Program-made: the position numbers and the translations under genes | Sequence record: KJ019152.1 | Length of the DNA stretch: 64,000 nucleotides | Reading direction: 5' to 3' (one strand) | Notes under the pieces: generated by a model | Seen by the model: the letters and a program-made list of their open reading frames with translations, nothing else | Told to the model about the DNA's origin: nothing | The model's database searches: none | Shown here: positions 3,120 to 64,000 of the stretch, piece by piece | Numbering within the stretch: the stretch's first letter is position 1 | Layout: every line of letters starts with the position of its first letter

Positions 3120-4489
3120 TGGATCGAATTGAGAATTTAATACTAAGATCACTCTCACATAGTGAAGGGTTTTCTAGGAAGGTTATCCCCTTCATCAAAC
3201 CAGATTATTTCCATGATAATGCTGAGAAAGTTCTCTTCGAAGAAATTGCACAATACATTGTCAAGTACAACTCCAATGTTACTGTACAGGCTCTAAGTAT
3301 TGAGGTGGAACAGAGAACCGATTTATCTGATAGTGACGTCAAAACTATCAGAACCATCCTAGATGACTTTGATGCAGTCACAGGAACTGATGAGTGGATG
3401 ATTGATTCCACTGAGAAGTGGTGTAAGAAACAGGCAATTTACAACGCTCTTATGGAGTCTGTGAGTATTGCCAATGGAGATAGTCAGACTAAGGCTGAAG
3501 ACGCTATCCCCAGTATCCTCTCAGAGGCTCTGGGTGTATCCTTTGATAGTAATGTAGGTCACGACTATATCGAGAATGCAGAGGATAGGTGGGAGTACTA
3601 TCACCAGAAGGAAGATAAGATTCCCTTCGATATTGATCTACTCAATGCGATTACTAAAGGTGGATTACCTAACAAGACACTGAATATCGCACTCGCTGGT
3701 ACTGGTGTCGGTAAGTCACTCTTTATGTGTCACGTAGCAGCCTCTAGTTTAATGCAGGGTAAGAATGTTCTATACATCACTGCTGAGATGGCAGAAGAGA
3801 AGATTGCAGAACGTATTGACTCCAACCTACTCAATGTGAATATCAAGGATCTATCTGAACTACCTAAACAGATGTTTGAGAAGAAGATTGATTCAGTAGC
3901 TAAGAAGACACAAGGTTCTTTAGTTATCAAGGAATATCCCACAGCTTCTGCACACTCAGGACACTTCAAGTCTCTACTTAACGAACTAAAACTCAAGAAG
4001 AACTTCACACCAGATATTATCTTTATTGATTATCTCAATATCTGTGCTTCCTCTCGTATCAGAGCTGGTGCTAACGCTAACTCCTACACACTAGTGAAGA
4101 GTATCGCAGAAGAGATTCGTGGTCTAGCGGTAGAGTTCAACGTTCCTATCGTGAGTGCTACTCAGACGACCCGTAGTGGGTATGGAAACAGTGACGTGGG
4201 TATCACAGATACCTCTGAGTCTTTCGGTCTTCCTGCAACCGCTGACCTTATGATTGCTCTCATCTCCACTGAGGAGTTGGAGGGACTGAATCAGATTATG
4301 GTTAAACAACTCAAGAACAGATACAATGATCCCACCATCCACAAGCGTTTTGTTGTCGGTATTGACAGAGCTAAGATGCGGTTGTATGACTGTGAGCAGG
4401 CAGCTCAGGATGATATTCTGGATTCTGGTGATACAGAAACCCAGGAAGGTTCTTCTCTCAAGGATAAGTTGGCAAAACTGAGTTTCTAG
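3119..4489 (+). CDS. gp41: replicative DNA helicase
   Basis: AGTGVGKS, IFIDYLN, SATQTTRSG and KQLKNRY motifs. Confidence 0.97.
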   Translation: MDRIENLILRSLSHSEGFSRKVIPFIKPDYFHDNAEKVLFEEIAQYIVKYNSNVTVQALSIEVEQRTDLSDSDVKTIRTILDDFDAVTGTDEWMIDSTEKWCKKQAIYNALMESVSIANGDSQTKAEDAIPSILSEALGVSFDSNVGHDYIENAEDRWEYYHQKEDKIPFDIDLLNAITKGGLPNKTLNIALAGTGVGKSLFMCHVAASSLMQGKNVLYITAEMAEEKIAERIDSNLLNVNIKDLSELPKQMFEKKIDSVAKKTQGSLVIKEYPTASAHSGHFKSLLNELKLKKNFTPDIIFIDYLNICASSRIRAGANANSYTLVKSIAEEIRGLAVEFNVPIVSATQTTRSGYGNSDVGITDTSESFGLPATADLMIALISTEELEGLNQIMVKQLKNRYNDPTIHKRFVVGIDRAKMRLYDCEQAAQDDILDSGDTETQEGSSLKDKLAKLSF

Positions 4490-4497
4490 TGTATAAT
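4469..4497 (+). promoter_or_regulatory. sigma70-type (early) promoter
   Basis: TTGGCA-17 nt-TATAAT. Confidence 0.75.
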
Positions 4498-4498
4498 G

Positions 4499-4575
4499 GT
4501 TATGTTGGGAAGAAACCCCAACCTCCTTTGTGATGTGGTGTTTGTTGGGGAAGGGGTGGTTCCCTTCCCTTTTTT
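4499..4575 (+). ncRNA. candidate small RNA or attenuator leader upstream of mazG
   Basis: Follows the promoter. It has a hairpin GTTGGG/CCCAAC and ends in an 8-bp GGGAAGGG/CCCTTCCC stem plus T6. Confidence 0.5.
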
Positions 4576-5436: not shown

Positions 5437-5571
5437 ATGGCTAAAAGAACCTATACTACAAAGTCTGGAGATGTGTTTGAGTGGGAAGAGACCCCTGAAA
5501 CTACTGCAGCACTCAAAGCTCTCCACAGACAAGTGGCAGAGACAAAACAGAAGCTTGACAGCACCAAGTGA
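5437..5571 (+). CDS. small hypothetical protein (44 aa)
   Basis: Hand-read ORF MAKRTYTTKSGDVFEWEET..., with GAGG ribosome-binding site. Confidence 0.6.
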   Translation: MAKRTYTTKSGDVFEWEETPETTAALKALHRQVAETKQKLDSTK

Positions 5572-5583
5572 GTCTGTTATAAT
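5555..5583 (+). promoter_or_regulatory. consensus sigma70 promoter for the ncRNA/tRNA cluster
   Basis: Perfect TTGACA-17 nt-TATAAT. Confidence 0.9.
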
Positions 5584-5588
5584 ATGAG

Positions 5589-5659
5589 AGTTGGGAAGGA
5601 AACCCCCCAACTGCGGTGACCCCCTTGGTAGTTCAGGGTTAGCGGCGATAGGAACTACC
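5589..5659 (+). ncRNA. unnamed structured RNA 5' of tRNA-Arg
   Basis: Stems AGTTGGG/CCCAACT and GGTAGTTC/GAACTACC; possible pseudoknot ACCC/GGGT. Confidence 0.55.
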
Positions 5660-5663
5660 ACAA

Positions 5664-5737
5664 GGGTCAGTAGCTCAGATGGATAGAGCAATTCACTTCT
5701 AATGAATTGGTCGGGGGTTCGAGTCCCTCCTGACCCG
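5664..5737 (+). tRNA. tRNA-Arg(TCT)
   Basis: Cloverleaf with acceptor GGGTCAG/CTGACCC, anticodon arm ATTCA-CTTCTAA-TGAAT and T loop GTTCGAG. No encoded CCA. Confidence 0.95.
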
Positions 5738-5758
5738 TTGGGGTCTAATTAACCCCAT

Positions 5759-5948
5759 AGGATGTGACAGAATGAACCGTTTGGTTAATACCGGTCATTG
5801 TATAGTAGGGAAGGCTGTGGTGGCCGCCAGAAAGACTAGGAGACTAGAGTTCTGAGAACCCATACCAGGGTCCCGAAAGTTCAGAGGTATTACTATTCTT
5901 AGTATGACCCCTCTGTTGGAGGTAAAAAGATAATCCTCCCATCCACCC
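5759..5948 (+). ncRNA. large structured RNA, probably the manA RNA motif class
   Basis: Non-coding and lies between two tRNAs. Stems include GGATG/CATCC (closing), AATGA-ACCG/CGG-TCATT, CTAG-GAGA-CTAG, CAGAGG/CCTCTG and GGAGG/CCTCC, with a possible GGTGG/CCACC pseudoknot. The manA name is from recollection, not a search. Confidence 0.6.
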
Positions 5949-5950
5949 AA

Positions 5951-6022
5951 TCCACAATAGCTCAGCGGTAGAGTCGGCGACTGTTAATCGCCTTGTCCCT
6001 GGTTCGAATCCAGGTTGTGGAG
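5951..6022 (+). tRNA. tRNA-Asn(GTT)
   Basis: Acceptor TCCACAA/TTGTGGA, anticodon arm GGCGA-CTGTTAA-TCGCC and T loop GTTCGAA. Confidence 0.95.
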
Positions 6023-14061: not shown

Positions 14062-14090
14062 TTGACAAGGGACCCCAGGTGTGTTATACT
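14062..14090 (+). promoter_or_regulatory. sigma70-type promoter
   Basis: TTGACA-17 nt-TATACT. Confidence 0.85.
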
Positions 14091-26635: not shown

Positions 26636-26674
26636 AGGGGGGTGGTTGCCACCTCCCTTTTTTTGTGCTATAAT
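26636..26674 (+). terminator. terminator overlapping a downstream sigma70 promoter
   Basis: AGGGGGGTGG/CCACCTCCCT stem plus T run. TTGCCA(26646)-17 nt-TATAAT(26669) overlaps it. Confidence 0.75.
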
Positions 26675-32940: not shown

Positions 32941-33171
32941 ATGAGAACTACATCCTTCCTAAGGTATCTTGGAAATACCTTACTAGTGTTGGGTCATTTC
33001 ACACTCCTTTGGGGGGATACACAGACCGCCTTGACTATCAAAATCATAGGTGGTCTTTCTTTGTTACCCTTTGCCATCTCCTGGAAGTTGTGGGATGTTG
33101 TGGCACTTGAGTTAATATTTGGAGGTATGGATGTAACCAAGTTCATCCAGCTGGTGTTTTCTAACTCCTAG
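32941..33171 (+). CDS. small membrane protein
   Basis: Several hydrophobic segments. Confidence 0.65.
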   Translation: MRTTSFLRYLGNTLLVLGHFTLLWGDTQTALTIKIIGGLSLLPFAISWKLWDVVALELIFGGMDVTKFIQLVFSNS

Positions 33172-33211
33172 GGTTTCTTTATTCCCTTACAAAGATGAAG
33201 TGGCGCACCTG

Positions 33212-33332
33212 ATTGGCAAACCCAAAAATATGTGTTATACTGGGTAGGTATTGGTAGCGTTTTCAGGGGTGAATAAACTACCAATACCAATCTAAACTCA
33301 TAGAAAACCACTCCTCATGGGGTGGTTTTTTT
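33212..33332 (+). ncRNA. stand-alone promoter-hairpin-terminator unit (candidate sRNA of about 85 nt)
   Basis: TTGGCA-17 nt-TATACT, an 11-bp perfect stem GGTATTGGTAG/CTACCAATACC, then terminator AAAACCACTCC/GGGGTGGTTTT. Confidence 0.6.
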
Positions 33333-44473: not shown

Positions 44474-44501
44474 AAGGAGGGTTTGATACCCTCCTTTTTT
44501 T
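44474..44501 (+). terminator. intrinsic terminator
   Basis: AAGGAGGGT/ACCCTCCTT stem plus T run. Confidence 0.8.
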
Positions 44502-44508
44502 GTGCTCC

Positions 44509-44516
44509 TATAAATA
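44509..44516 (+). promoter_or_regulatory. T4-type late promoter
   Basis: TATAAATA. Confidence 0.75.
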
Positions 44517-47155: not shown

Positions 47156-47184
47156 TTGGCACCCTGGGGAATCTGTGTTATAAT
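47156..47184 (+). promoter_or_regulatory. psbA promoter
   Basis: TTGGCA-17 nt-TATAAT, preceded by AACTGGCAC. Confidence 0.8.
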
Positions 47185-47232
47185 AAACACATAAATAAGA
47201 AATGTAAAGTTCTTATTACAACACTTCCATCT

Positions 47233-47333
47233 AACCGAGACCTACGGGGAAGTAAAATACGTCTCTAATACCTACACCGGAGGGTGGTGTAGGAATAATA
47301 CTATCGTCAGCTCCCCCTGGCACTACTTACCCT
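47233..47333 (+). ncRNA. PhotoRC-II-like structured 5' leader of psbA
   Basis: GAGAC/GTCTC and CCTACACC/GGTGTAGG stems in the psbA leader. The family name is from recollection. Confidence 0.65.
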
Positions 47334-47342
47334 TTTTACACA

Positions 47343-48422
47343 ATGGCTTCAACACTTACACGCCGTCAAGGCGCATCTATCTGGGATCAGTTTTGTTCCT
47401 GGGTCACATCAACCAACAATCGTCTTTACGTCGGTTGGTTCGGTGTTCTAATGATTCCTACATTGTTAGCCGCAACTGTATGTTTCATTATCGCTTTCGT
47501 GGGTGCTCCCCCAGTGGACATCGACGGAATCCGTGAACCAGTAGCTGGTTCACTCATGTATGGAAACAACATCATCTCTGGTGCAGTTGTTCCTAGTTCA
47601 AACGCAATCGGTCTACACTTCTACCCAATCTGGGAAGCAGCCACACTCGACGAATGGCTCTACAACGGTGGTCCTTTCCAACTAGTTGTCTTCCACTTCC
47701 TTATTGGTATCTACGCCTATATGGGACGTGAGTGGGAACTCTCTTATCGTTTAGGTATGAGACCTTGGATCTGTGTAGCATACTCTGCACCAGTTGCAGC
47801 AGCTTCAGCAGTATTCCTAGTCTATCCTTTCGGTCAAGGTTCATTCTCAGACGCGATGCCCTTGGGTATCTCTGGAACATTCAACTACATGTTGGTCTTC
47901 CAAGCAGAACATAACATCTTGATGCACCCCTTCCACATGTTGGGAGTCGCAGGTGTCTTCGGTGGTTCATTGTTCTCAGCGATGCATGGTTCACTTGTTA
48001 CCTCTTCACTTGTCCGTGAGACAACTGAAACTGAGTCACAGAACTATGGTTACAAGTTCGGCCAAGAAGAAGAGACCTATAACATCGTGGCAGCCCATGG
48101 CTACTTCGGTCGTTTGATCTTTCAATACGCTTCATTCAACAACTCACGCTCACTCCACTTCTTCTTAGCCGCATGGCCAGTTGTGGGTATCTGGTTCACC
48201 GCACTTGGTGTTTCCACAATGGCATTCAACCTCAATGGTTTCAACTTCAACCAGTCTGTTATCGACGGACAAGGTAGAGTATTGAACACCTGGGCGGATG
48301 TTCTTAACAGAGCTGGTCTTGGGATGGAAGTAATGCATGAGAGAAATGCACACAACTTCCCACTAGATTTGGCAGCAGCTGAGTCCACACCAGTGGCTCT
48401 AATTGCACCATCTGTTGGTTGA
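47343..48422 (+). CDS. psbA: photosystem II D1 protein
   Basis: Full length and uninterrupted; NRLYVGWFG...[14 protein letters not shown]. Confidence 0.99.
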
Positions 48423-48734: not shown

Positions 48735-48782
48735 ATGACGACAAGTACACTTACAACACCACAAAGGGGGTGTATTCGTTAG
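48735..48782 (+). pseudogene. orphaned original 5' end of psbD
   Basis: Encodes MTTSTLTTPQRG, a typical cyanophage D2 N-terminus, then diverges to CIR-stop. Confidence 0.8.
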
Positions 48783-48823
48783 TCTGGAAGCAACTGACAC
48801 AAAACACAAAATATCATAGGGGT

Positions 48824-48901
48824 ATTGGCAAACCCAAAAATATGTGTTATACTGGGTAGGGATAGGTAGAGTATTCAGGGGTGAAAAGACTACCTATACC
48901 C
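48824..48901 (+). repeat. second copy of the promoter-hairpin unit at 33212
   Basis: 37 nt identical to 33212-33248, the same TTCAGGGGTGAA core, and stem ATAGGTAG/CTACCTAT. Confidence 0.9.
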
Positions 48902-49098
48902 CCCAATAATACACAGCAATAATACACAGAGAATACTTATAATAAAACCCCTACGGGGTTTGCCTACGGGCAACTGAAAGAGATATATGTATAGGGGGCA
49001 ACTGATATAACTGCTATGCCCGCTACGCCAACCTGAAAAACCACAAAGGTAGTATAACACCAGAAGTAGTTATTGGCAACTATCTAGAAACTATCTAG

Positions 49099-49127
49099 TT
49101 GCCGCAGGGGTTTTTATGCGTTATAAT
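49099..49127 (+). promoter_or_regulatory. sigma70-type promoter for the HNH operon
   Basis: TTGCCG-17 nt-TATAAT. Confidence 0.7.
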
Positions 49128-49150
49128 AATAATACCCTGAATACAAAACT

Positions 49151-49315
49151 ATGAGTATGGTGAAGCAACACCTGTGGCAAGAGCAACACGCCCCTACCGC
49201 AGAAGATATAGAAGAGTATGAGTTATACTGCTACTACCTAGATATGGTAGAGCGGTATAATACTACCGCCCCTATGAAGTTTTTAGAAGAAGTGTTTGGT
49301 GAAGAGGTAGAGTGA
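49151..49315 (+). CDS. small acidic hypothetical protein (54 aa)
   Basis: Hand-read MSMVKQHLWQEQHAPTAEDIEEYELY...; GTGA overlap with the HNH gene. Confidence 0.65.
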   Translation: MSMVKQHLWQEQHAPTAEDIEEYELYCYYLDMVERYNTTAPMKFLEEVFGEEVE

Positions 49316-49944
49316 AGCAACTAATACAAAACCCAAACAACTATACAATAACCCCAGAGGGGGTTGTATTATCTAACAAATACAAACGCCCCCTATCACT
49401 ACAATATGATAGAGGGGGCAACCCCTTCTACCAGATAAAACGCCTAGGGGGTGGTAGTAGGCAACAACTATACCAAAACAAACTACTACCCCAACACTAC
49501 CCCTTCTACTGGATAAACCAGTTAGAGGGGGGTGAAGAGTGTAGGAATATAACTTATATCTACCAACACCCTATACCCCCCTACAAATACTTTATAACCA
49601 ACAGAGGTAGGGTTTGGAGCAACCTATCTAATAGGTTTTTAGAAACCCAACACAACTATGGTAGGGGTGGATACTATGATAGAATAACCATAGATACACA
49701 CTCTGTGAATACACACTGGTTGGTAGGTAGATACTTTTTAGAGAACTGGTATGCTGGTTGCTTTGTTTGCCATAGGTGTGAAACTCTACCCTACCCAAAC
49801 AGAAACTACCCTACTAACCTGTGGGTAGGCAACAACAGCAGCAACCAGTTAGATAGTGAGAGCAAGCAGAGAACACTACACAGAAGAAAGAGAGTGAGTG
49901 AGTGTATGAGAGGCAACCAAAACTGGCGGGGCAAACACAAATAA
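49312..49944 (+). CDS. NUMOD4/HNH homing endonuclease (I-HmuI-like)
   Basis: YFITNRGRVWS (NUMOD4-like), GY, THWLVGRYF, VCH, NRNYPTNL and SNQLD. Confidence 0.85.
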   Translation: MKQLIQNPNNYTITPEGVVLSNKYKRPLSLQYDRGGNPFYQIKRLGGGSRQQLYQNKLLPQHYPFYWINQLEGGEECRNITYIYQHPIPPYKYFITNRGRVWSNLSNRFLETQHNYGRGGYYDRITIDTHSVNTHWLVGRYFLENWYAGCFVCHRCETLPYPNRNYPTNLWVGNNSSNQLDSESKQRTLHRRKRVSECMRGNQNWRGKHK

Positions 49945-50001
49945 CACACAAACTCTGTATAACTGCTCTACTACGCTTTCTAACCTAGCACTTTGTTGCT
50001 C

Positions 50002-50030
50002 TGGACTAACAGGGAGTTATGTGTTATAAT
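50002..50030 (+). promoter_or_regulatory. replacement promoter for psbD
   Basis: TGGACT-17 nt-TATAAT with extended -10 TGTG. Confidence 0.7.
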
Positions 50031-50063
50031 ATAAACATAAATACATATAACTTCACAAAAACT

Positions 50064-51122
50064 ATGACTGCTTCACTTGCACCCCCAAAAAGCAACGGGG
50101 GTTGGTATGATATTTTAGAAGACTGGTTGCAGAAAGATAGGTTTATCTTTATTGGCTGGTCTGGATTACTACTTCTTCCCACTGCTTATCTTGCCATTGG
50201 CGGCTGGCTTACTGGCACAACTTTTGTCACGAGTTGGTACACCCATGGTCTTGCTTCTTCCTATCTTGAGGGTGCTAACTTTCTCACGGCGGCTGTCTCG
50301 ACTCCTGCTGATGCTATGGGTCATTCTCTTCTTCTACTTTGGGGTCCTGAATCTCAGGGCGACTTCCAGCGGTGGCTCCAACTTGGAGGGCTTTGGTCCT
50401 TTGTTGCTCTCCACGGTGCCTTCGCTCTAATTGGATTCATGCTTCGTCAGTTCGAACTGTCACGACTCATTGGTATCCGTCCCTACAACGCTATTGCATT
50501 CAGTGGTCCTATCGCTGTATTCGTCAGTGTGTTTCTTCTATACCCACTAGGTCAATCTTCCTGGTTCTTTGCCCCCTCCTTTGGTGTGGCAGCAATCTTT
50601 AGATTCCTATTGTTTCTTCAGGGTTTCCACAACTGGACACTGAACCCCTTCCATATGATGGGAGTTGCTGGTATACTAGGTGGAGCACTACTATCTGCAA
50701 TCCATGGCGTTACTGTTGAAAATACCCTATATGAAGATGGAGAACAGAATAACACCTTCACTGCGTTCGATTCCACGCAGGAGGAAGAGACCTATTCGAT
50801 GGTTACTGCGAACCGCTTCTGGTCGCAAATCTTCGGGGTTGCGTTTAGTAATAAGCGTTGGCTTCACTTCTTTATGTTGTTTGTCCCTGTCATGGGTCTT
50901 TGGGTCTCAAGTATTGGCATCATTGGGCTTGCTCTTAATCTTCGTGCTTATGATTTTGTGAGCCAAGAGATTAGAGCAGCAGAAGATCCTGAGTTTGAAA
51001 CTTTCTACACAAAGAACATCCTTCTTAACGAAGGACTAAGAGCATGGATGGCACCTGTGGATCAACCACATGAGTCATTTGTATTCCCAGAAGAAGTTCT
51101 ACCTAGAGGTAACGCATTGTGA
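50064..51122 (+). CDS. psbD: photosystem II D2 protein with recoded N-terminus
   Basis: [17 protein letters not shown] and [10 protein letters not shown]. The N-terminus reads [31 protein letters not shown]. Confidence 0.98.
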
Positions 51123-52023: not shown

Positions 52024-52050
52024 GGAGGGTATAACAACCCTCCTTTTTTT
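52024..52050 (+). terminator. intrinsic terminator
   Basis: GGAGGGT/ACCCTCC stem plus T7. Confidence 0.8.
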
Positions 52051-52218
52051 ATGCGATTCGATTTAACCATGGATGATTATGCCATCATCCTCAACGCATT
52101 ACACTATTATAAGAAAGTAGAGAAGCGTGGCAACTTCAAGCAGTATAACGAGGAGCGAGTTAACGATCTTAGGGACCGAATGGCCCACCAAATCGTCTGG
52201 GAACAGGGTGAAGAGTAG
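52051..52218 (+). CDS. small hypothetical protein (55 aa)
   Basis: Hand-read MRFDLTMDDYAIILNALHYY... Confidence 0.6.
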   Translation: MRFDLTMDDYAIILNALHYYKKVEKRGNFKQYNEERVNDLRDRMAHQIVWEQGEE

Positions 52219-53489: not shown

Positions 53490-53523
53490 CAGGAGGGCAA
53501 CCCTCCTTTTTTTGTGCTATAAT
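53490..53523 (+). terminator. terminator followed by a -10 box
   Basis: AGGAGGG-CAA-CCCTCCT stem plus T run, then GTGCTATAAT. Confidence 0.75.
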
Positions 53524-59197: not shown

Positions 59198-62100
59198 ATG
59201 ATCTCAACAGCGACTAAGATTAAATTTAAAAGGTCTGGTGTAGCCGGACGTAGACCCTCCTTAGCTGATCTTCAGTTAGGTGAATTGGGGATCAATTATA
59301 ACGATGGTAAACTATTTTTCCGACAGGAAAATGAAGTAGTTGGCTCTCGTATCATTGAACCTGGACAGGGTGATGTAATCGGTAAGACTATTTTCGTATC
59401 CACAAAGGGTAACGATAACAATAGTGGTCTTAACGAAAGAGATGCCAAGAGAACTGTTAAAGCGGCCGCCGCAGTAGCAGAACCTGGTGACTCCATCAAA
59501 CTGTATCCAGGTCAGTACATCGAAGATAACCCTATCGTATTTAAGGATAGGGTATCTGTAGAGGGTATGGAGCTTCGTAACGTTCTCGTTACTCCAGCCA
59601 ACCCCAGTAAAGACTTGTATCAAGTTGGTGAGGCGTTCCACGCTACCAACCATTCCTTTGTGTCCAATAGGGATTCAACAGATGGTGCCTCTATTATCAC
59701 CTATCGTCCTCTAGAGGGAACTGCGTCTGACAGGTATTTTGACGCGGCTAGACTCATCAGGGACAATCTTAGCTTCATTGCTAACGAGACAGTAGGTTTC
59801 CTAACCAGTGGATATTCAGGCTTTGCCGCTGGTCAGAGATCACAGGACGCTGCTCGTGCTCTAGAACTAAACAAGAACTTCATAGTAGAAGAAGCATTTC
59901 AATATATCAACTCTCCTGATTATACAGGAGCCACATACTTCAACCCAGACCCAGCACAGTGTAAGAGAGACCTAGGAAATATCATTGATGGTTGGAGATA
60001 TGATCTCATCTCTGATGGTAACACCAGATCTACTGGTCTTGGTCTAACCTACTACGCACCTATTCCCTTTGTGAATAGTGCTAATGTTGCTGACCTTGTA
60101 TACAACAGAAATAACGGTGATGTTCTAATTGAAACCGACGTAGATACACAGGTTTCAGTTGGTGAGAAGATCAAACTACAGGATATCAGACTAGAGTGTG
60201 GTTCCTACAATAACGACTTCTTTATCACTGGTTTCAAGTATGATAACACCAGTGGTATTGGAACAGTTAATCTACCCTTTATCCATAACGTCAAGGTTGG
60301 AGACCTTGTTAAGTTTGATGGTTTAGAGTTTGATTGTCCTGCCTATGGTGCCATTGAATATGGTATCCAAGACTTCAAGTATAATGAAACTACTGGTGGA
60401 AGTGTTGTCACACTCACCGAAGATCACGATCTAAAGATTGGTGACACCATTGAACTAAGAGACCTTCAGTTCGATTGTCCCGCCTATGGTGGTGACTTCA
60501 CTAACATCATCAACCTAGAATACAATAAGACCAGTGGTCAGGGTGTTATCACATATGACAAACCCGCCGATCTCAAGTCTGGTGACGTTGTTATCCTCTA
60601 TGACCTCACACTAACTTGTGATGCTTATGGTAACGCTATCTCAGTTACTGATTTCTCTTATGATAACTTCACTGGTATCACTGAAGTAGAAGTAAATAGA
60701 CCCCACAACCTCCGTCCCGGAGACCTAATCAAACTAGAGAACCTTAAGTTCTCTTGTGATTCCTACCTTAATGAAACATACAAGGTCTCTAACTTTGTAT
60801 ATAATGAGAGCACTGGTGATAGTGTCCTCACCCTAACTGAACCACATAGTTTAGTTGCTGGTAAGAACGTCAGACTTGCTGACCTAGTTTTCTCCTGTAA
60901 CTCCTATGTTCCAACCGCTAAAGCAATCTCTGATTTCCAGTATGATGAAGTAGTTGGTATCTCTACTATTACTCTAGCATCTCCACACAACTTATCAGTT
61001 GGTGAGCAGTTCAGACTAGAGGACCTAGTATTCTCCTGTAACTCATACTCCTTCACTGATATTCCTATCATTGATGCACCATATGATAATGTAACTGGTT
61101 ATGTAACCCTATCGTTCTCTGGTGACCACGGACAACAGGTTGGTGAGAGAGTAAGACTCAGAGATATTGAGTACTCCTGCCCTGGTGGTTCAGGTATCAC
61201 TACAACCTTGTTCCCCGATGGAACCTTTGGTTATGAGTTTGAAATCCTAAGTGTTCCAAACACTAAGAAGATGATTCTTAATGTTGGCACCTCCACTATT
61301 GAACACTCCTATGTGAGTGGTGGTACTGCTACCGTTGGTATTACAACTACTATCTTCCCTGATGGAACACAAGGTTTCGACTTCAATGTATCCAGTGTTA
61401 ATAGTTCCACTGTTATCGAAGCAAGTGTTGGTATTTCTACCATCGCTCACAACTATGTTTCTGGTGGATCATTATTCGTTGGTTTCACTACCACAGTATT
61501 CCCCGATGGAACACAAGGTGATACCTTCAGAGTTAATTCTATTCCTTCTAGCACTCAAATCAGTGTTAATGTTGGTGTATCTTCTATCGCCCATACTTTC
61601 GTATCCGGTGGTACAGCAACTGACCTAGACTCTTTCATCCCTGTATCTGGTTTCACCTACAATGAAGGTGACGGAACTGGACTAGTATCCCTAGACAAGG
61701 CACACAACCTAGTGGTTGGTGACTCTTTTGTTCTAGAGGATCTTAAGTTCAACTGTAACTCCTACAGAACAGGTGGTACTTCTACTATTGATATCACTAA
61801 CTTTGAGTATGATAAGGTAACCGGACTATCTACAGTCACACTATCTTCTTCACACAACCTACATGTTAATGATACCGTAGCACTATATGATATCAAGTTC
61901 TCTTGTCCTGGTGGTTCAGGTATTACAACTAATATCTTCCCCGATGGAACCAGAGACAACTTCTATGATGTAGTTGCTGACCTAAACCCCAACCAGATTA
62001 TTGTTCGTGTTGGTAAGTCTGACATTACTCACACATACGCTAGTGGTGGTAGTCTATCCGTTGGTATCACTACTAACATCTTCCCTGATGGAACCAGACC

Positions 62101-64000
62101 TTCTGGTGACTTCTTCCAGGTCATCTCTGTCCCCTCTACCAAGTCTGTTCTAACTCAGGTTGGTCTATCCTCTATCGCCCACTCATACGCAAGTGGTGGT
62201 AAGTTCTACACTGGTATCACTACCAATGTATTCCCACAGGTATTCACTGACCCCAACATCAAGGTAACCAACGCTGTATATGACGAAGTATCTGGTGTTA
62301 TCACCATTACTACTAACAAGGCACACGGACTTACCGCTACCGCACCTGTTCTACTACAGGACCTAAACTTCTCTTGCCTCTCTGGTGGTGTAGGAAACAC
62401 CCCAGGCAACCTTGTATTCCCCAGGAACCAGGAAGTTTATGATGTTGTGTCCGTTCTATCTACTACACAATATACGATCAATGTAGGTCCTTCTGACTTC
62501 GCTCACGCATATGTTGATGGTGGTACTTCTACCACACAGAACATCACTAAGGCATCCTACAACAAAGGAACTGGTGATCTAACAGTAACCCTAGACAAGC
62601 AACACGGTTATTCAGTTGGTGATCGTGCTAGTGTGGTTGATCTCCTCTTCTCCTGTCAGTCTGGTGGTCCTAACAACCAACCTGGAACACTTCTATTCCC
62701 TCGTCCTACTGATGAGTATGAAGTTCTATCCGCAAGTGGTAAGACACTCACAGTTAATGTTGGAGCGTTCCCATCACTAGTTCATACCTATAAGAATGGT
62801 GGATCACTAACCTATAGTTCTACTGTACTTCCTGTAAGTAACGCAGTTTATGATCAATCAACTGGAGTTCTAACACTTACCACATCAATTGCACTAGGGG
62901 CACCTGTTGGTTCTACCATTAAGATGCAGGGTCTAAACTTCTCCTGTGCCTCTGGTGGTCCTGGTAATGACGCTGGTGCTATTGTATTCCCAAGACTAGA
63001 CACCCCTACCTTCAAGGTTAAGGAAGTCAAGAGTGGTGTATCCTATGTTATCAATGTAGGAACCTCTACACTCTCACACACATATACATCTGGTGGTTTC
63101 TCCTCACTCAAGAAGTTGAAGAACGACCCCAATATTTTCAAAGTTATCGACACCCCAACACCTAGTAAGGTTATTACTAATGTAGGTGTCTCATCTATCG
63201 TTCATGACTATGTGAGTGGTGGTAATATGTTCGTGGGTATCACCACTAATGTATTCCCTGATGGAACTCGCCCTGATGGAAGTAGGTTCGAAGTTATCTC
63301 CGCCCTATCACCCAACCAGGCACTCATCAACATCGGTGTTTCTACTATCACCCACAACTACGATAGTGGTGGTAGGATGCAGTATGGTACTACCAATGAG
63401 AGACCTGTTCTAGACTTCCTATACGATGGTCAGACTGGTATCTCCACTGTAACTATTAGAGGAACTCATGGTTTGAACCAGGGTGACCTAGTGAAACTCA
63501 GAGGTCTTGAGTTCGCTTGTACTAACTCACCTGGTATTACAACTACTATCTTCCCAGATGGAACTGCCGCTGGTCTCAATATCTACAAGGTTACTGAGAT
63601 TATTAGTAACAGTACCTTCAAGACAAATGTAGGTAGAGTTGGATTCGATCATACTTACATCCAAGGTGGTTCCGCTTTCGTTGGTATCACTACTAACATC
63701 TTCCCAGATGGAACACAAGGTTACAACTATACAGTTGCCGCCATTCCTAATAAGAATCAGGTAACAGTTGATGTGGGTATCTCCAGTATCCAACATGATT
63801 ATATTCGTGGTGGATCACTATTCTCTGGTAAGACTAACGAGAGAGATATCGCAGACTTCAAGTATGATCACATCTCTGGTGATGCGGTTCTTACCTTCAG
63901 AAAGGCACAGAACTTATTCACACAAGATCTAGTAAAACTTAAGAACCTTCAGTTTGATTGTCCAAACTCTACTGGTATCACTACTACTCTCTTCCCAGAC
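59198..64000 (+). CDS. giant repeat-rich virion structural protein (at least 1601 aa, 3' end outside window)
   Basis: Starts MISTATKIKFKRSGVAGRRPSLADLQLGELGINYNDGKLF. Spot checks are in frame to the last codon (GITTTLFPD), with many GITT.IFPDG and Y.SGG repeats. It is absent from the ORF track, presumably because it has no stop in the window. Confidence 0.85.
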   Translation, partial: MISTATKIKFKRSGVAGRRPSLADLQLGELGINYNDGKLFFRQENEVVGSRIIEPGQGDVIGKTIFVSTKGNDNNSGLNERDAKRTVKAAAAVAEPGDSIKLYPGQYIEDNPIVFKDRVSVEGMELRNVLVTPANPSKDLYQVGEAFHATNHSFVSNRDSTDGASIITYRPLEGTASDRYFDAARLIRDNLSFIANETVGFLTSGYSGFAAGQRSQDAARALELNKNFIVEEAFQYINSPDYTGATYFNPDPAQCKRDLGNIIDGWRYDLISDGNTRSTGLGLTYYAPIPFVNSANVADLVYNRNNGDVLIETDVDTQVSVGEKIKLQDIRLECGSYNNDFFITGFKYDNTSGIGTVNLPFIHNVKVGDLVKFDGLEFDCPAYGAIEYGIQDFKYNETTGGSVVTLTEDHDLKIGDTIELRDLQFDCPAYGGDFTNIINLEYNKTSGQGVITYDKPADLKSGDVVILYDLTLTCDAYGNAISVTDFSYDNFTGITEVEVNRPHNLRPGDLIKLENLKFSCDSYLNETYKVSNFVYNESTGDSVLTLTEPHSLVAGKNVRLADLVFSCNSYVPTAKAISDFQYDEVVGISTITLASPHNLSVGEQFRLEDLVFSCNSYSFTDIPIIDAPYDNVTGYVTLSFSGDHGQQVGERVRLRDIEYSCPGGSGITTTLFPDGTFGYEFEILSVPNTKKMILNVGTSTIEHSYVSGGTATVGITTTIFPDGTQGFDFNVSSVNSSTVIEASVGISTIAHNYVSGGSLFVGFTTTVFPDGTQGDTFRVNSIPSSTQISVNVGVSSIAHTFVSGGTATDLDSFIPVSGFTYNEGDGTGLVSLDKAHNLVVGDSFVLEDLKFNCNSYRTGGTSTIDITNFEYDKVTGLSTVTLSSSHNLHVNDTVALYDIKFSCPGGSGITTNIFPDGTRDNFYDVVADLNPNQIIVRVGKSDITHTYASGGSLSVGITTNIFPDGTRPSGDFFQVISVPSTKSVLTQVGLSSIAHSYASGGKFYTGITTNVFPQVFTDPNIKVTNAVYDEVSGVITITTNKAHGLTATAPVLLQDLNFSCLSGGVGNTPGNLVFPRNQEVYDVVSVLSTTQYTINVGPSDFAHAYVDGGTSTTQNITKASYNKGTGDLTVTLDKQHGYSVGDRASVVDLLFSCQSGGPNNQPGTLLFPRPTDEYEVLSASGKTLTVNVGAFPSLVHTYKNGGSLTYSSTVLPVSNAVYDQSTGVLTLTTSIALGAPVGSTIKMQGLNFSCASGGPGNDAGAIVFPRLDTPTFKVKEVKSGVSYVINVGTSTLSHTYTSGGFSSLKKLKNDPNIFKVIDTPTPSKVITNVGVSSIVHDYVSGGNMFVGITTNVFPDGTRPDGSRFEVISALSPNQALINIGVSTITHNYDSGGRMQYGTTNERPVLDFLYDGQTGISTVTIRGTHGLNQGDLVKLRGLEFACTNSPGITTTIFPDGTAAGLNIYKVTEIISNSTFKTNVGRVGFDHTYIQGGSAFVGITTNIFPDGTQGYNYTVAAIPNKNQVTVDVGISSIQHDYIRGGSLFSGKTNERDIADFKYDHISGDAVLTFRKAQNLFTQDLVKLKNLQFDCPNSTGITTTLFPD

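What the first reader, a model, noticed from the sequence alone, without database searches (positions are those of the whole stretch)
33212..33332. Promoter plus hairpin RNA unit present twice, with a compensatory base change
Seen in sequence: 33212-33248 and 48824-48860 are identical over 37 nt (ATTGGCAAACCCAAAAATATGTGTTATACTGGGTAGG). Both continue into GGTAG-20 nt-CTACC stems with TTCAGGGGTGAA at the same offset. The flanking pair covaries (TGGTAG/CTACCA versus AGGTAG/CTACCT) while the linkers diverge. Copy 1 is followed by its own terminator with no ORF, so it looks like a stand-alone gene of about 85 nt. Copy 2 is the first thing inside the psbD cassette. Inference: this is a selected RNA (or ssDNA) structure of unknown function, such as an sRNA, a protein decoy or antitoxin mimic, an R-loop replication origin, or a recombination handle that built the cassette.
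Basis: partly seen in the sequence, partly recalled or inferred. Interest (0 to 1): 0.75.

Follow-up and report, generated by a model that had tools for sequence, protein, structure and literature searches.

The report
Promoter-hairpin head of homing-endonuclease cassettes
The repeated 77-base unit is the promoter plus folded RNA leader that sits at the front of a family of mobile homing-endonuclease gene cassettes in this cyanophage; one copy heads an intact cassette in front of psbD and the other is a leftover without its genes.

Summary
The window is Synechococcus phage ACG-2014f (100% to KJ019152.1). The repeat is real: 33212-33288 and 48824-48900 share 77 nt at 91% identity, and the first 37 nt are identical. 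Each copy holds an extended -10 sigma-70-type promoter. A stable hairpin starts at the predicted +1.

It is not a two-copy oddity. A third copy lies 7 kb left of the window in the same genome. Further members occur in another isolate, in Tara metagenome contigs and in IMG/VR contigs.

The shared layout is: promoter, AGG, a two-tier hairpin that usually has a GGGG loop, a terminator fused to a second promoter, sometimes a small acidic ORF54-family gene, and then an endonuclease gene. The endonucleases are HNH/NUMOD4, Endo VII-type, NUMOD3-type or GIY-YIG-like. All sites are isolate-specific insertions.

Copy 2 heads a 1.3-kb cassette inserted into the 5' end of psbD. Copy 1 is a solo remnant. 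Tara contigs carry the full cassette at that same site. The terminator after copy 1 is native to the locus and belongs with a wcaG-like RNA motif.

Within the close copies covariation is not significant. Across the whole family 8 of 15 pairs show compensatory changes.

Most likely this is the regulatory head of the cassette, an early promoter plus a 5'-terminal RNA stem-loop. A discrete small RNA remains possible.

The parts
33212..33288 (+). Copy 1 of the 77-nt repeat: promoter P1 (-35 at 33213-33218, -10 at 33236-33241, TG extension) plus hairpin (stem 33247-33257 with 33278-33288; apical TTCA-GGGG-TGAA at 33262-33273).
   Evidence: It is a solo copy with no ORF54-type or endonuclease gene behind it.
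33289..33306 (+). Short tail that came in with copy 1. It is absent from empty-site genomes.
   Evidence: Alignment with KJ019085 and KJ019093.
33307..33332 (+). Intrinsic terminator native to the locus. It is the likely end point of copy-1 transcripts, giving an RNA of about 85-90 nt.
   Evidence: Present in genomes without the element.
33121..33214 (+). wcaG-like RNA motif (below the Rfam threshold), immediately upstream of copy 1. It overlaps the 3' end of ORF 32941-33171.
   Evidence: RF01761 scores 30.7 bits against a gathering score of 42, E 0.0012. It is also seen in L004 and L018. The gmd and epimerase genes lie downstream.
32941..33171 (+). Conserved small membrane-type ORF (76 aa, phrog_2318), not annotated in KJ019152. 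It is the left neighbour of the copy-1 site.
48735..48790 (+). Orphan 5' fragment of psbD left by the cassette insertion. It is truncated and also carries one frame-disrupting change in this isolate.
48791..50092 (+). The 1.3-kb cassette inserted in the 5' end of psbD (outer bounds approximate). It is present in 8 of about 45 ACG-2014f isolates.
48824..48900 (+). Copy 2 of the repeat: promoter P1 at 48825-48853 plus hairpin at 48859-48901 (one bulged A, GGGG loop).
49059..49127 (+). Degenerate terminator stem plus T-run, fused to the second promoter P2 (TTGCCG-17-TATAAT at 49099-49127). It is a PeSL-like composite that is clean in the third copy and in the Tara contigs.
49151..49315 (+). ORF54, a small acidic protein of the phrog_10005 family.
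49312..49944 (+). ORF210, an HNH/NUMOD4-like free-standing homing endonuclease candidate.
   Evidence: PHROG HNH families match with E 1e-6. It is 33% identical (E 7e-20) to the L033 endonuclease, and the L034 counterpart of that gene passes Pfam NUMOD4.
50002..50030 (+). Outward-facing promoter at the right end of the cassette, serving psbD. It is about 92% identical to the -10 region of the psbA promoter.
50064..51122 (+). Full-length psbD. Its first codons are of donor type, different from those of cassette-free isolates.

Best explanation
The 77-nt unit is the conserved upstream control module of a family of mobile, free-standing homing-endonuclease cassettes of T4-like cyanophages.

Shown by sequence comparison. 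The module is a host-type (sigma-70-like, extended -10) early promoter. It is followed by AGG and a long two-tier hairpin that usually has a GGGG loop. In most members a terminator follows, fused to a second promoter. After that come a small ORF54-family gene and/or an endonuclease gene, and an outward promoter for the interrupted neighbour. Copy 2 heads such a cassette inserted in the 5' end of psbD. Copy 1 is what remains of one at the wcaG-motif/terminator site.

Inferred mechanism. Host RNA polymerase starts at the A or G just before the stem. The nascent RNA closes into a 5'-terminal stem-loop. Such a stem-loop protects the transcript from 5'-end-dependent decay and keeps the leader folded independently of whatever lies upstream. 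Most transcripts stop at the next terminator, giving RNAs of 70-105 nt. Read-through adds to expression of the cassette genes from the second promoter.
For: Family and context:
- A covariance model finds only three copies in the 221-kb genome, at record positions 116967, 157213 and 172825. Each is an isolate-specific insertion.
- Three different sites carry the module next to endonuclease genes of different families: HNH-like ORF210, an Endo VII-type 197-aa gene (phrog_1035, E 1e-31), and a NUMOD3 gene.
- IMG/VR contigs carry it before a GIY-YIG-like gene.
- Tara contigs L033, L034 and L037 hold the full cassette at exactly the copy-1 site.

Promoter:
- The -35 hexamer (TTGGCA, or TTGACT in the IMG/VR members), the -10 hexamer and the TG extension are kept in 7 distinct versions, while the spacer varies.
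- Seven ordinary early promoters of the same TTGGCA-17-TATACT type sit in front of small ORFs elsewhere in the genome.

Structure:
- All members fold at the same place.
- On the family alignment 95% of cells are paired and 8 of 15 pairs have changes on both sides. None of 500 shuffles reaches this, and the slid controls collapse.
- Eight G-U cells pair only on the + strand.
Against: - No transcript data exist for this phage, so the start site and the stop are predictions.
- The family alignment was fitted to the structure by the model and represents only about five independent lineages.
- Within the close copies covariation is not significant, and two population variants break a pair.
- With its own terminator and a second promoter behind it, the first promoter is not obviously needed for the cassette genes. 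This fits a separate RNA product at least as well.
- The 5'-end protection role rests on general knowledge of 5' stem-loops, not on anything tested here.
Confidence: 0.55

Rival explanations
1. The promoter, hairpin and following terminator form a separate small RNA gene of 70-105 nt. Its folded GGGG-loop hairpin acts in trans, for example by binding a protein or by controlling the neighbouring endonuclease, and it travels with the cassette.
For: In 6 of 8 loci a strong terminator follows within 0-25 nt, and a second promoter then serves the genes. The promoter hexamers and the GGGG loop are kept while the stems covary. Copy 1 persists alone in about 22 isolates.
Against: The single-stranded tail is not conserved; it is absent in L039 and different in copy 1. 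No complementary target was found in the phage genome. The terminator of copy 1 is borrowed. One member (KJ019101) has no terminator and a different loop. No Rfam family matches at threshold.
Confidence: 0.25
2. The repeat is a recombination handle, like the promoter-early stem-loop cassettes (PeSLs) of T4-type phages. Exchange between copies moved or built the psbD cassette.
For: Every copy lies at an insertion/deletion site. PeSL-mediated shuffling is documented in T4-type phages (PMC2839356, PMC4122927).
Against: The cassette junctions lie 33 nt and 68 nt outside the repeat. The stem-loop is downstream of the promoter, not upstream, and no Shine-Dalgarno sequence and start codon follow. The sequences that are actually duplicated at junctions are terminators: contig L018 has a gene flanked by two copies of the 33307-33331 terminator. 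The terminator plus second-promoter composite fits the PeSL layout better.
Confidence: 0.08
3. The unit has no function of its own. It is a hitch-hiking piece of cassette DNA, and copy 1 is a decaying scar.
For: Copy 1 has lost its genes. Some isolates carry a pair-breaking change in the stem. Presence is polymorphic at every site.
Against: The promoter hexamers are invariant across diverged members. The stems are rebuilt with different sequences in at least four lineages. The hairpins are among the most stable 0.2-0.4% of windows.
Confidence: 0.08
4. It acts at the DNA level, as an R-loop replication origin or as a cruciform recognised by a nuclease.
For: It combines a promoter with a long palindrome. 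One cassette carries an Endo VII-type gene.
Against: It is absent from most conspecific genomes at each site, so it is not an essential origin. G-U pairs would be A-C mismatches on the other strand and G-T in DNA. The accompanying nucleases belong to unrelated families.
Confidence: 0.04

Closest known systems
PeSL (promoter-early stem-loop) regulatory cassettes of T4-type phages (Arbiol et al. 2010, PMC2839356; Comeau et al. 2014, PMC4122927)
   Same: It is a short repeated unit in a T4-like phage made of a sigma-70-type early promoter and a stem-loop, and it is found at sites of gene gain and loss.
   Different: In a PeSL the stem-loop is a terminator just upstream of the promoter, and a Shine-Dalgarno sequence plus start codon follows. 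Here the hairpin is downstream at +1, has no U-run, and is followed by no start codon. There are only three copies per genome. The second promoter inside the cassette (49059-49127) is the PeSL-like part.
Free-standing homing endonuclease genes of phages, e.g. F-CphI next to psbA in cyanophage S-PM2 (PMC6083498) and the seg/mob genes of T4
   Same: The genes are optional and inserted between or into conserved genes. The flank of the target gene (the psbD 5' end) is replaced with donor sequence. The region is the same psbA-psbD region. One family member carries an Endo VII-type enzyme like F-CphI.
   Different: No conserved promoter-hairpin-terminator head shared by cassettes with unrelated nucleases is described in the papers read here. 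ORF210 is HNH/NUMOD4-like, not Endo VII-type.
Putative mobile promoters / promoter reuse in prokaryotes (PMC3575422)
   Same: A promoter-bearing segment with over 80% identity across more than 50 nt is found upstream of unrelated genes in one genome.
   Different: Here the carrier of the promoter is identified (endonuclease cassettes), and the segment includes a structured RNA with covariation.
5'-terminal stabilising stem-loops of bacterial and phage mRNAs (general knowledge, e.g. the ompA leader; not tested here)
   Same: The hairpin begins within 0-2 nt of the predicted 5' end, which is the geometry known to block 5'-end-dependent RNase attack.
   Different: In most members the transcript meets a terminator before any coding sequence, so it is unclear what would be stabilised.
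wcaG RNA motif (RF01761; Weinberg et al. 2010, PMC2864571). This is the neighbour of copy 1, not the element itself.
   Same: The region 33121-33214 matches the model. It lies upstream of GDP-mannose dehydratase and epimerase genes, the typical context.
   Different: The score is below the gathering threshold (30.7 against 42 bits). Copy 1 separates the motif from the terminator that follows it directly in other isolates.

Membership tests
PeSL | A sigma-70-like early promoter with a 17-nt spacer | tested here: met
   TTGGCA-17-TATACT with a TG extension in both copies.
PeSL | A stem-loop (terminator) located just upstream of the promoter | tested here: not met
   No hairpin lies upstream of either -35. 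The hairpin lies downstream at +1 and lacks a U-run.
PeSL | A Shine-Dalgarno sequence and the start codon of the served gene at the 3' end | tested here: not met
   Copy 1 runs into a terminator. Copy 2 is 250 nt from the next ORF, which has its own promoter.
PeSL | Break points of insertions, deletions or exchanges fall in the element | tested here: not met
   The junctions lie 33 nt (copy 2) and 68 nt (third copy) to the left of the unit. Only the left junction of copy 1 abuts it.
Any Rfam family (release 15) | A score at or above the family's gathering threshold | tested here: not met
   There are no hits at either copy. Only generic leader-like matches below threshold appear, for example Leu_leader at 35.7 against 50 bits.
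Free-standing homing endonuclease cassette | Optional presence between or in conserved genes among close relatives | tested here: met
   The psbD cassette is in 8 of about 45 isolates. The gp45 cassette is in 1 and the gp32 cassette in 1. Empty sites were sequenced.
Free-standing homing endonuclease cassette | Encodes a protein of a homing-endonuclease family | tested here: met
   ORF210 matches PHROG HNH families with E 1e-6 and has no Pfam hit of its own. It is 33% identical to the L033 endonuclease, whose L034 counterpart passes Pfam NUMOD4. The paralogous cassettes carry an Endo VII-type gene (E 1e-31) and a NUMOD3 gene.
Free-standing homing endonuclease cassette | Donor-type sequence in the flank of the target gene | tested here: met
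   psbD behind the cassette has different first codons, and an orphan 5' fragment remains upstream.
Free-standing homing endonuclease cassette | Site-specific cleavage of the cassette-free allele | not testable with these tools
   This would need biochemistry.
Intrinsic terminator (for the hairpin itself) | A G+C-rich stem followed by a U-run | tested here: not met
   The hairpin is followed by CCAAUCUAAAC in copy 1 and CCCCCCAAUAAU in copy 2. The scan does not list it as a terminator.
Miniature inverted-repeat element | Terminal inverted repeats and a target-site duplication | tested here: not met
   Only a 5-nt ATTGG...CCAAT symmetry is present, and there is no duplication at the copy-1 junctions.
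Trans-acting small RNA | A discrete transcript with defined ends | not testable with these tools
   Only a promoter and terminator are predicted. No expression data are available.
wcaG RNA (neighbouring motif) | Rfam gathering score, and a position upstream of exopolysaccharide genes | tested here: inconclusive
   The score is 30.7 bits in the window and 27.1-32.4 bits in L018 and L004, against a threshold of 42. The context criterion is met (PMC2864571).

The most novel reading that the evidence does not exclude
The promoter-hairpin-terminator unit encodes a discrete 70-105-nt structured RNA with a conserved GGGG-loop hairpin. This RNA would be a functional RNA partner of free-standing homing endonucleases. 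It would be shared by cassettes carrying HNH, Endo VII-type, NUMOD3-type and GIY-YIG-like enzymes, and would, for example, control endonuclease expression or activity in the carrier phage. That would make it a new class of mobile-element-associated RNA in marine phages.
Probability: 0.25. Interest if true: 0.8.

Novelty: new variant of a known kind. Interest (0 to 1): 0.55.

Why it matters
Homing-endonuclease cassettes are a main route of gene exchange among T4-like phages. Here one such cassette has remodelled the 5' end and promoter of psbD, a photosynthesis gene. Another has split a candidate riboswitch (the wcaG-like motif) from its terminator.

It was not described, in the papers I could read, that cassettes with unrelated nucleases share one conserved promoter plus structured-RNA head. 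This gives a sequence marker for finding such cassettes in viromes. It also gives a concrete candidate RNA motif whose expression can be checked in existing metatranscriptomes. Finally, it shows how a leftover promoter can rewire a phage auxiliary-gene operon.

Tried and rejected
- Rfam at gathering and at permissive thresholds gave nothing for either copy. It did reveal the neighbouring wcaG-like motif.
- ARAGORN found no tRNA-like element at the copies.
- The IMG/VR scan with the loop pattern returned only the phage's own genome. The scan with TGTTATACTGGGTAGG gave two chance hits in unrelated contigs. The scan with the second-promoter composite again returned only the phage's own genome.
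- In the metagenome scan, two of the three hits were chance matches in coding DNA.
- Looking for more copy-1 variants through ORF76 homologues gave contigs without the element.
- A promoter at 14062-14090 shares TGTGTTATACT and GGGTAGGT. It is the ordinary promoter of a methylase gene, not a further copy.
- The idea that the cassette is an intron in psbD was rejected. The 5' end of psbD is duplicated, and the downstream copy has its own start codon and promoter.
- A search for phage targets complementary to the tails or the loop found only chance-level matches.
- A MAFFT/RNAalifold alignment of the divergent paralogues was too poor to use. A model-based alignment was used instead, and its bias is stated.
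- ORF210 has no informative match among solved structures or in NCBIfam.

Full report
IDENTITY OF THE WINDOW. The window matches Synechococcus phage ACG-2014f isolate Syn7803C25 (KJ019152.1) at 100% identity. This is a T4-like cyanomyovirus. Window position 1 corresponds to record position 124001. About 45 closely related isolates are in the phage collection, which allowed a population comparison.

THE OBSERVATION.
- The repeat is real. Positions 33212-33288 and 48824-48900 share 77 nt at 91% identity, and the first 37 nt are identical.
- The promoter string occurs twice in the window, against 0 expected by chance.
- Both copies are scored as TTGGCA-17-TATACT promoters with a TG extension.
- RNA from the predicted start folds into an 11-bp lower stem, a 4x4 internal loop, a 4-bp upper stem and a GGGG loop. 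The energy is -19.8 kcal/mol (z -5.9) for copy 1 and -18.2 (z -2.5, one bulged A) for copy 2.
- These values lie in the most stable 0.2-0.4% of 45-nt windows of this sequence.
- The stem starts at 33247. The predicted start site, 5-7 nt after the -10 hexamer, is 33246-33248.

COVARIATION IN THE CLOSE COPIES. However, copy 2 also breaks another pair. One group of isolates has a G-C to A-C change, and one metagenome variant has G-C to G-U. Counted formally, the close subfamily gives one compensatory pair, and 12/500 or 69/500 shuffles reach the observed score. That is suggestive but not significant.

COPY 1 IN CONTEXT.
- In conspecific genomes without the element (KJ019085, KJ019093), the terminator 33307-33332 is present. 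It follows the sequence GTGGCGCGCC or GTGGTGCGCC after only 8 nt. The terminator is therefore native to the locus, not part of a self-contained gene.
- The sequence just upstream, 33121-33214, matches the wcaG RNA motif below threshold: 30.7 bits against a gathering score of 42, E 0.0012. Similar scores were seen in two other loci.
- The motif lies upstream of GDP-mannose 4,6-dehydratase and an NAD-dependent epimerase. That is the context for which the motif was named (PMC2864571).
- Copy 1 plus an 18-nt tail is therefore inserted exactly between a candidate riboswitch aptamer and its terminator.
- The motif overlaps the end of a conserved 76-aa ORF (32941-33171, phrog_2318). This ORF is not annotated in the record.

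COPY 2 IN CONTEXT.
- In most isolates psbD starts 12 nt after the small ORF that follows psbA.
- In 8 isolates, including this one, about 1.3 kb (about 48791-50092) is inserted inside the first codons of psbD. The insertion leaves an orphan 5' fragment (48735-48790), which is truncated and carries one further frame-disrupting change in this isolate.
- A full-length psbD lies downstream, with different first codons and its own promoter at 50002-50030. That promoter is about 92% identical to the -10 region of the psbA promoter.
- From left to right the insert carries: copy 2, starting 33 nt from the left junction; a degenerate terminator fused to a second promoter (49099-49127); ORF54 (phrog_10005); and ORF210.
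- ORF210 matches PHROG HNH-endonuclease families with E 1e-6. By eye it shows a NUMOD4-like and an HNH-like motif.
- ORF210 is 33% identical (E 7e-20) to the endonuclease of Tara contig L033, whose L034 counterpart passes Pfam NUMOD4.
- This is the anatomy of a free-standing homing-endonuclease cassette. One such gene, F-CphI, is already known next to psbA in cyanophage S-PM2 (PMC6083498).

THE FAMILY. Weak BLAST hits led to further members.
- A third copy lies in the same genome, 7 kb left of the window at record 116967. It consists of a TTGGCA-17-TATACT promoter, GGGTAGGGATA..., a three-tier hairpin with a GGGG loop, the tail TATAATACACAGCAA (as in copy 2), a clean terminator fused to TTGCCG-17-TATAAT, an ORF54 paralogue (71% identity) and a 197-aa Endo VII-type endonuclease gene (phrog_1035, E 1e-31).
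- This 1041-nt cassette is unique to this isolate. In the others, the gp45 stop codon and its terminator directly precede the next gene.
- Isolate KJ019101 has a member downstream of gp32. It has a different, longer hairpin (-29 kcal/mol), a second promoter, an ORF54 paralogue and a NUMOD3 homing-endonuclease gene on the other strand.
- Tara Oceans contigs found through ORF54 homologues show the complete cassette at the copy-1 site. The order is ORF76 and wcaG-like motif, promoter, hairpin with TTCAGGGGTGAA, tail, terminator plus second promoter, ORF51, endonuclease, outward promoter, ORF98.
- Copy 1 of the window is therefore a solo remnant of such a cassette.
- Two IMG/VR contigs from a different phage carry TTGACT-17-TATACT, AGG, a hairpin with new lower and upper stems and again a GGGG loop, an immediate terminator, a second promoter, and a gene that by eye looks GIY-YIG-like. 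The Pfam scan did not include this gene.
- A covariance model built from the close copies finds exactly three copies in the whole 221-kb genome, and it finds all these relatives.

STRUCTURE ACROSS THE FAMILY. Ten distinct sequences were aligned to the model.
- 95% of cells are paired.
- 8 of 15 pairs have changes on both sides.
- None of 500 shuffles reaches the observed values.
- Sliding the partner by 1-3 columns lowers pairing to 30-48%.
- Caveats: the alignment was fitted to the structure, and only about five independent lineages are represented.
- The eight G-U cells pair only on the + strand, which argues for RNA rather than DNA or the antisense strand.
- The -35 hexamer, the -10 hexamer and the TG extension are kept in seven versions while the spacer varies.
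- Ordinary early promoters of the same TTGGCA-17-TATACT type precede seven small ORFs in the hyperplastic region of the genome, without a hairpin. The promoter is therefore of the phage's normal early type.

WHAT IT IS AND HOW IT LIKELY WORKS.
- Shown: the unit is the upstream regulatory head of a family of mobile endonuclease cassettes. Copy 2 is in place on a cassette, and copy 1 is a remnant.
- Inferred: host polymerase starts just before the stem, the RNA folds into a 5'-terminal stem-loop, and most transcripts end at the next terminator.
- I favour a cis role. The hairpin would give 5'-end protection and independent folding of the cassette leader, with read-through adding to the second promoter.
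- The layout of promoter, hairpin, terminator and then a second promoter fits a separate 70-105-nt RNA about as well, and I keep that as the main rival.
- Against a base-pairing small RNA: the single-stranded tail is not conserved, and no phage target was found.

COMPARISON WITH PeSLs. PeSLs have the stem-loop upstream of the promoter and a ribosome-binding site plus start codon downstream (PMC4122927). The unit fails both features, and the junctions do not fall in it. The terminator plus second-promoter composites do have the PeSL layout. So does the duplicated terminator that flanks an extra gene in metagenome contig L018. These are the better candidates for recombination handles. The repeat meets the sequence criterion of 'putative mobile promoters' (PMC3575422), and here its carrier is identified.

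LIMITS.
- There are no expression data.
- Endonuclease activity is untested.
- The wcaG assignment is below threshold.
- Counts of isolates include a few RefSeq duplicates, which I removed by eye.

DISCLOSURE. None was entered into a tool or used as evidence.

Noticed in passing
window 33121-33214: There is a wcaG-like RNA motif below the Rfam threshold, upstream of gmd and epimerase genes. In element-free isolates it is followed after 8 nt by the terminator, like an aptamer with its expression platform. Copy 1 splits the two.
   Followed up: partly
window 32941-33171: A conserved 76-aa membrane-type ORF (phrog_2318, many metagenome homologues) is not annotated in KJ019152.1. Its 3' end overlaps the wcaG-like motif.
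   Followed up: partly
window 4469-4575 and 5555-5612: A second promoter-plus-hairpin family is present. TTGGCA-17-TATAAT, then GTTGGGAAGAAACCCCAAC, then a terminator at 4547-4575 with no ORF. TTGACA-17-TATAAT, then GAGTTGGGAAGGAAACCCCCCAACT, lies ahead of the tRNA/manA cluster.
   Followed up: partly
window 5664-6022: A manA RNA (90 bits) lies between tRNA-Arg(TCT) and tRNA-Asn(GTT).
   Followed up: no
window 47211-47306: A PhotoRC-II RNA (69 bits) lies between a TTGGCA-17-TATAAT promoter (47156-47184) and psbA (47343-48422).
   Followed up: no
window 26639-26674, 44476-44511, 52035-52057, 53497-53523: There are repeated composites of a terminator whose T-run runs into TGnTATAAT. These are PeSL-like terminator-promoter units.
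   Followed up: no
window 50002-50030 vs 47174-47197: The promoter that serves psbD behind the cassette is about 92% identical to the -10 region and start of the psbA promoter. This is a second case of promoter reuse.
   Followed up: partly
window 49079-49051 (minus strand): A promoter-like site (TTGCCA-17-TATACT with TG) lies inside the cassette and points leftwards. Its RNA would be antisense to copy 2. It sits in about 170 nt that the compact paralogue lacks.
   Followed up: no
window 49151-49315; L031 13148-13306; L026 1066-1221: The ORF54 family (about 50 aa, very acidic, phrog_10005) accompanies endonuclease genes of unrelated families. Its role is unknown.
   Followed up: partly
L018 (metagenome contig), reverse strand 640-941: At the copy-1 site an extra small gene of about 250 nt is flanked by two copies of the 33307-33331 terminator. 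This suggests terminator-mediated cassette exchange.
   Followed up: partly
KJ019152.1 record 30144-55605 (L029, L030): Seven near-identical early promoter cassettes (TTGGCA-17-TATACT, a leader of about 25 nt, then ATG) lie in front of small ORFs of the hyperplastic region.
   Followed up: no
window 60200-64000: A large ORF running off the right end of the window contains many diverged coding repeats of about 144-150 nt.
   Followed up: no
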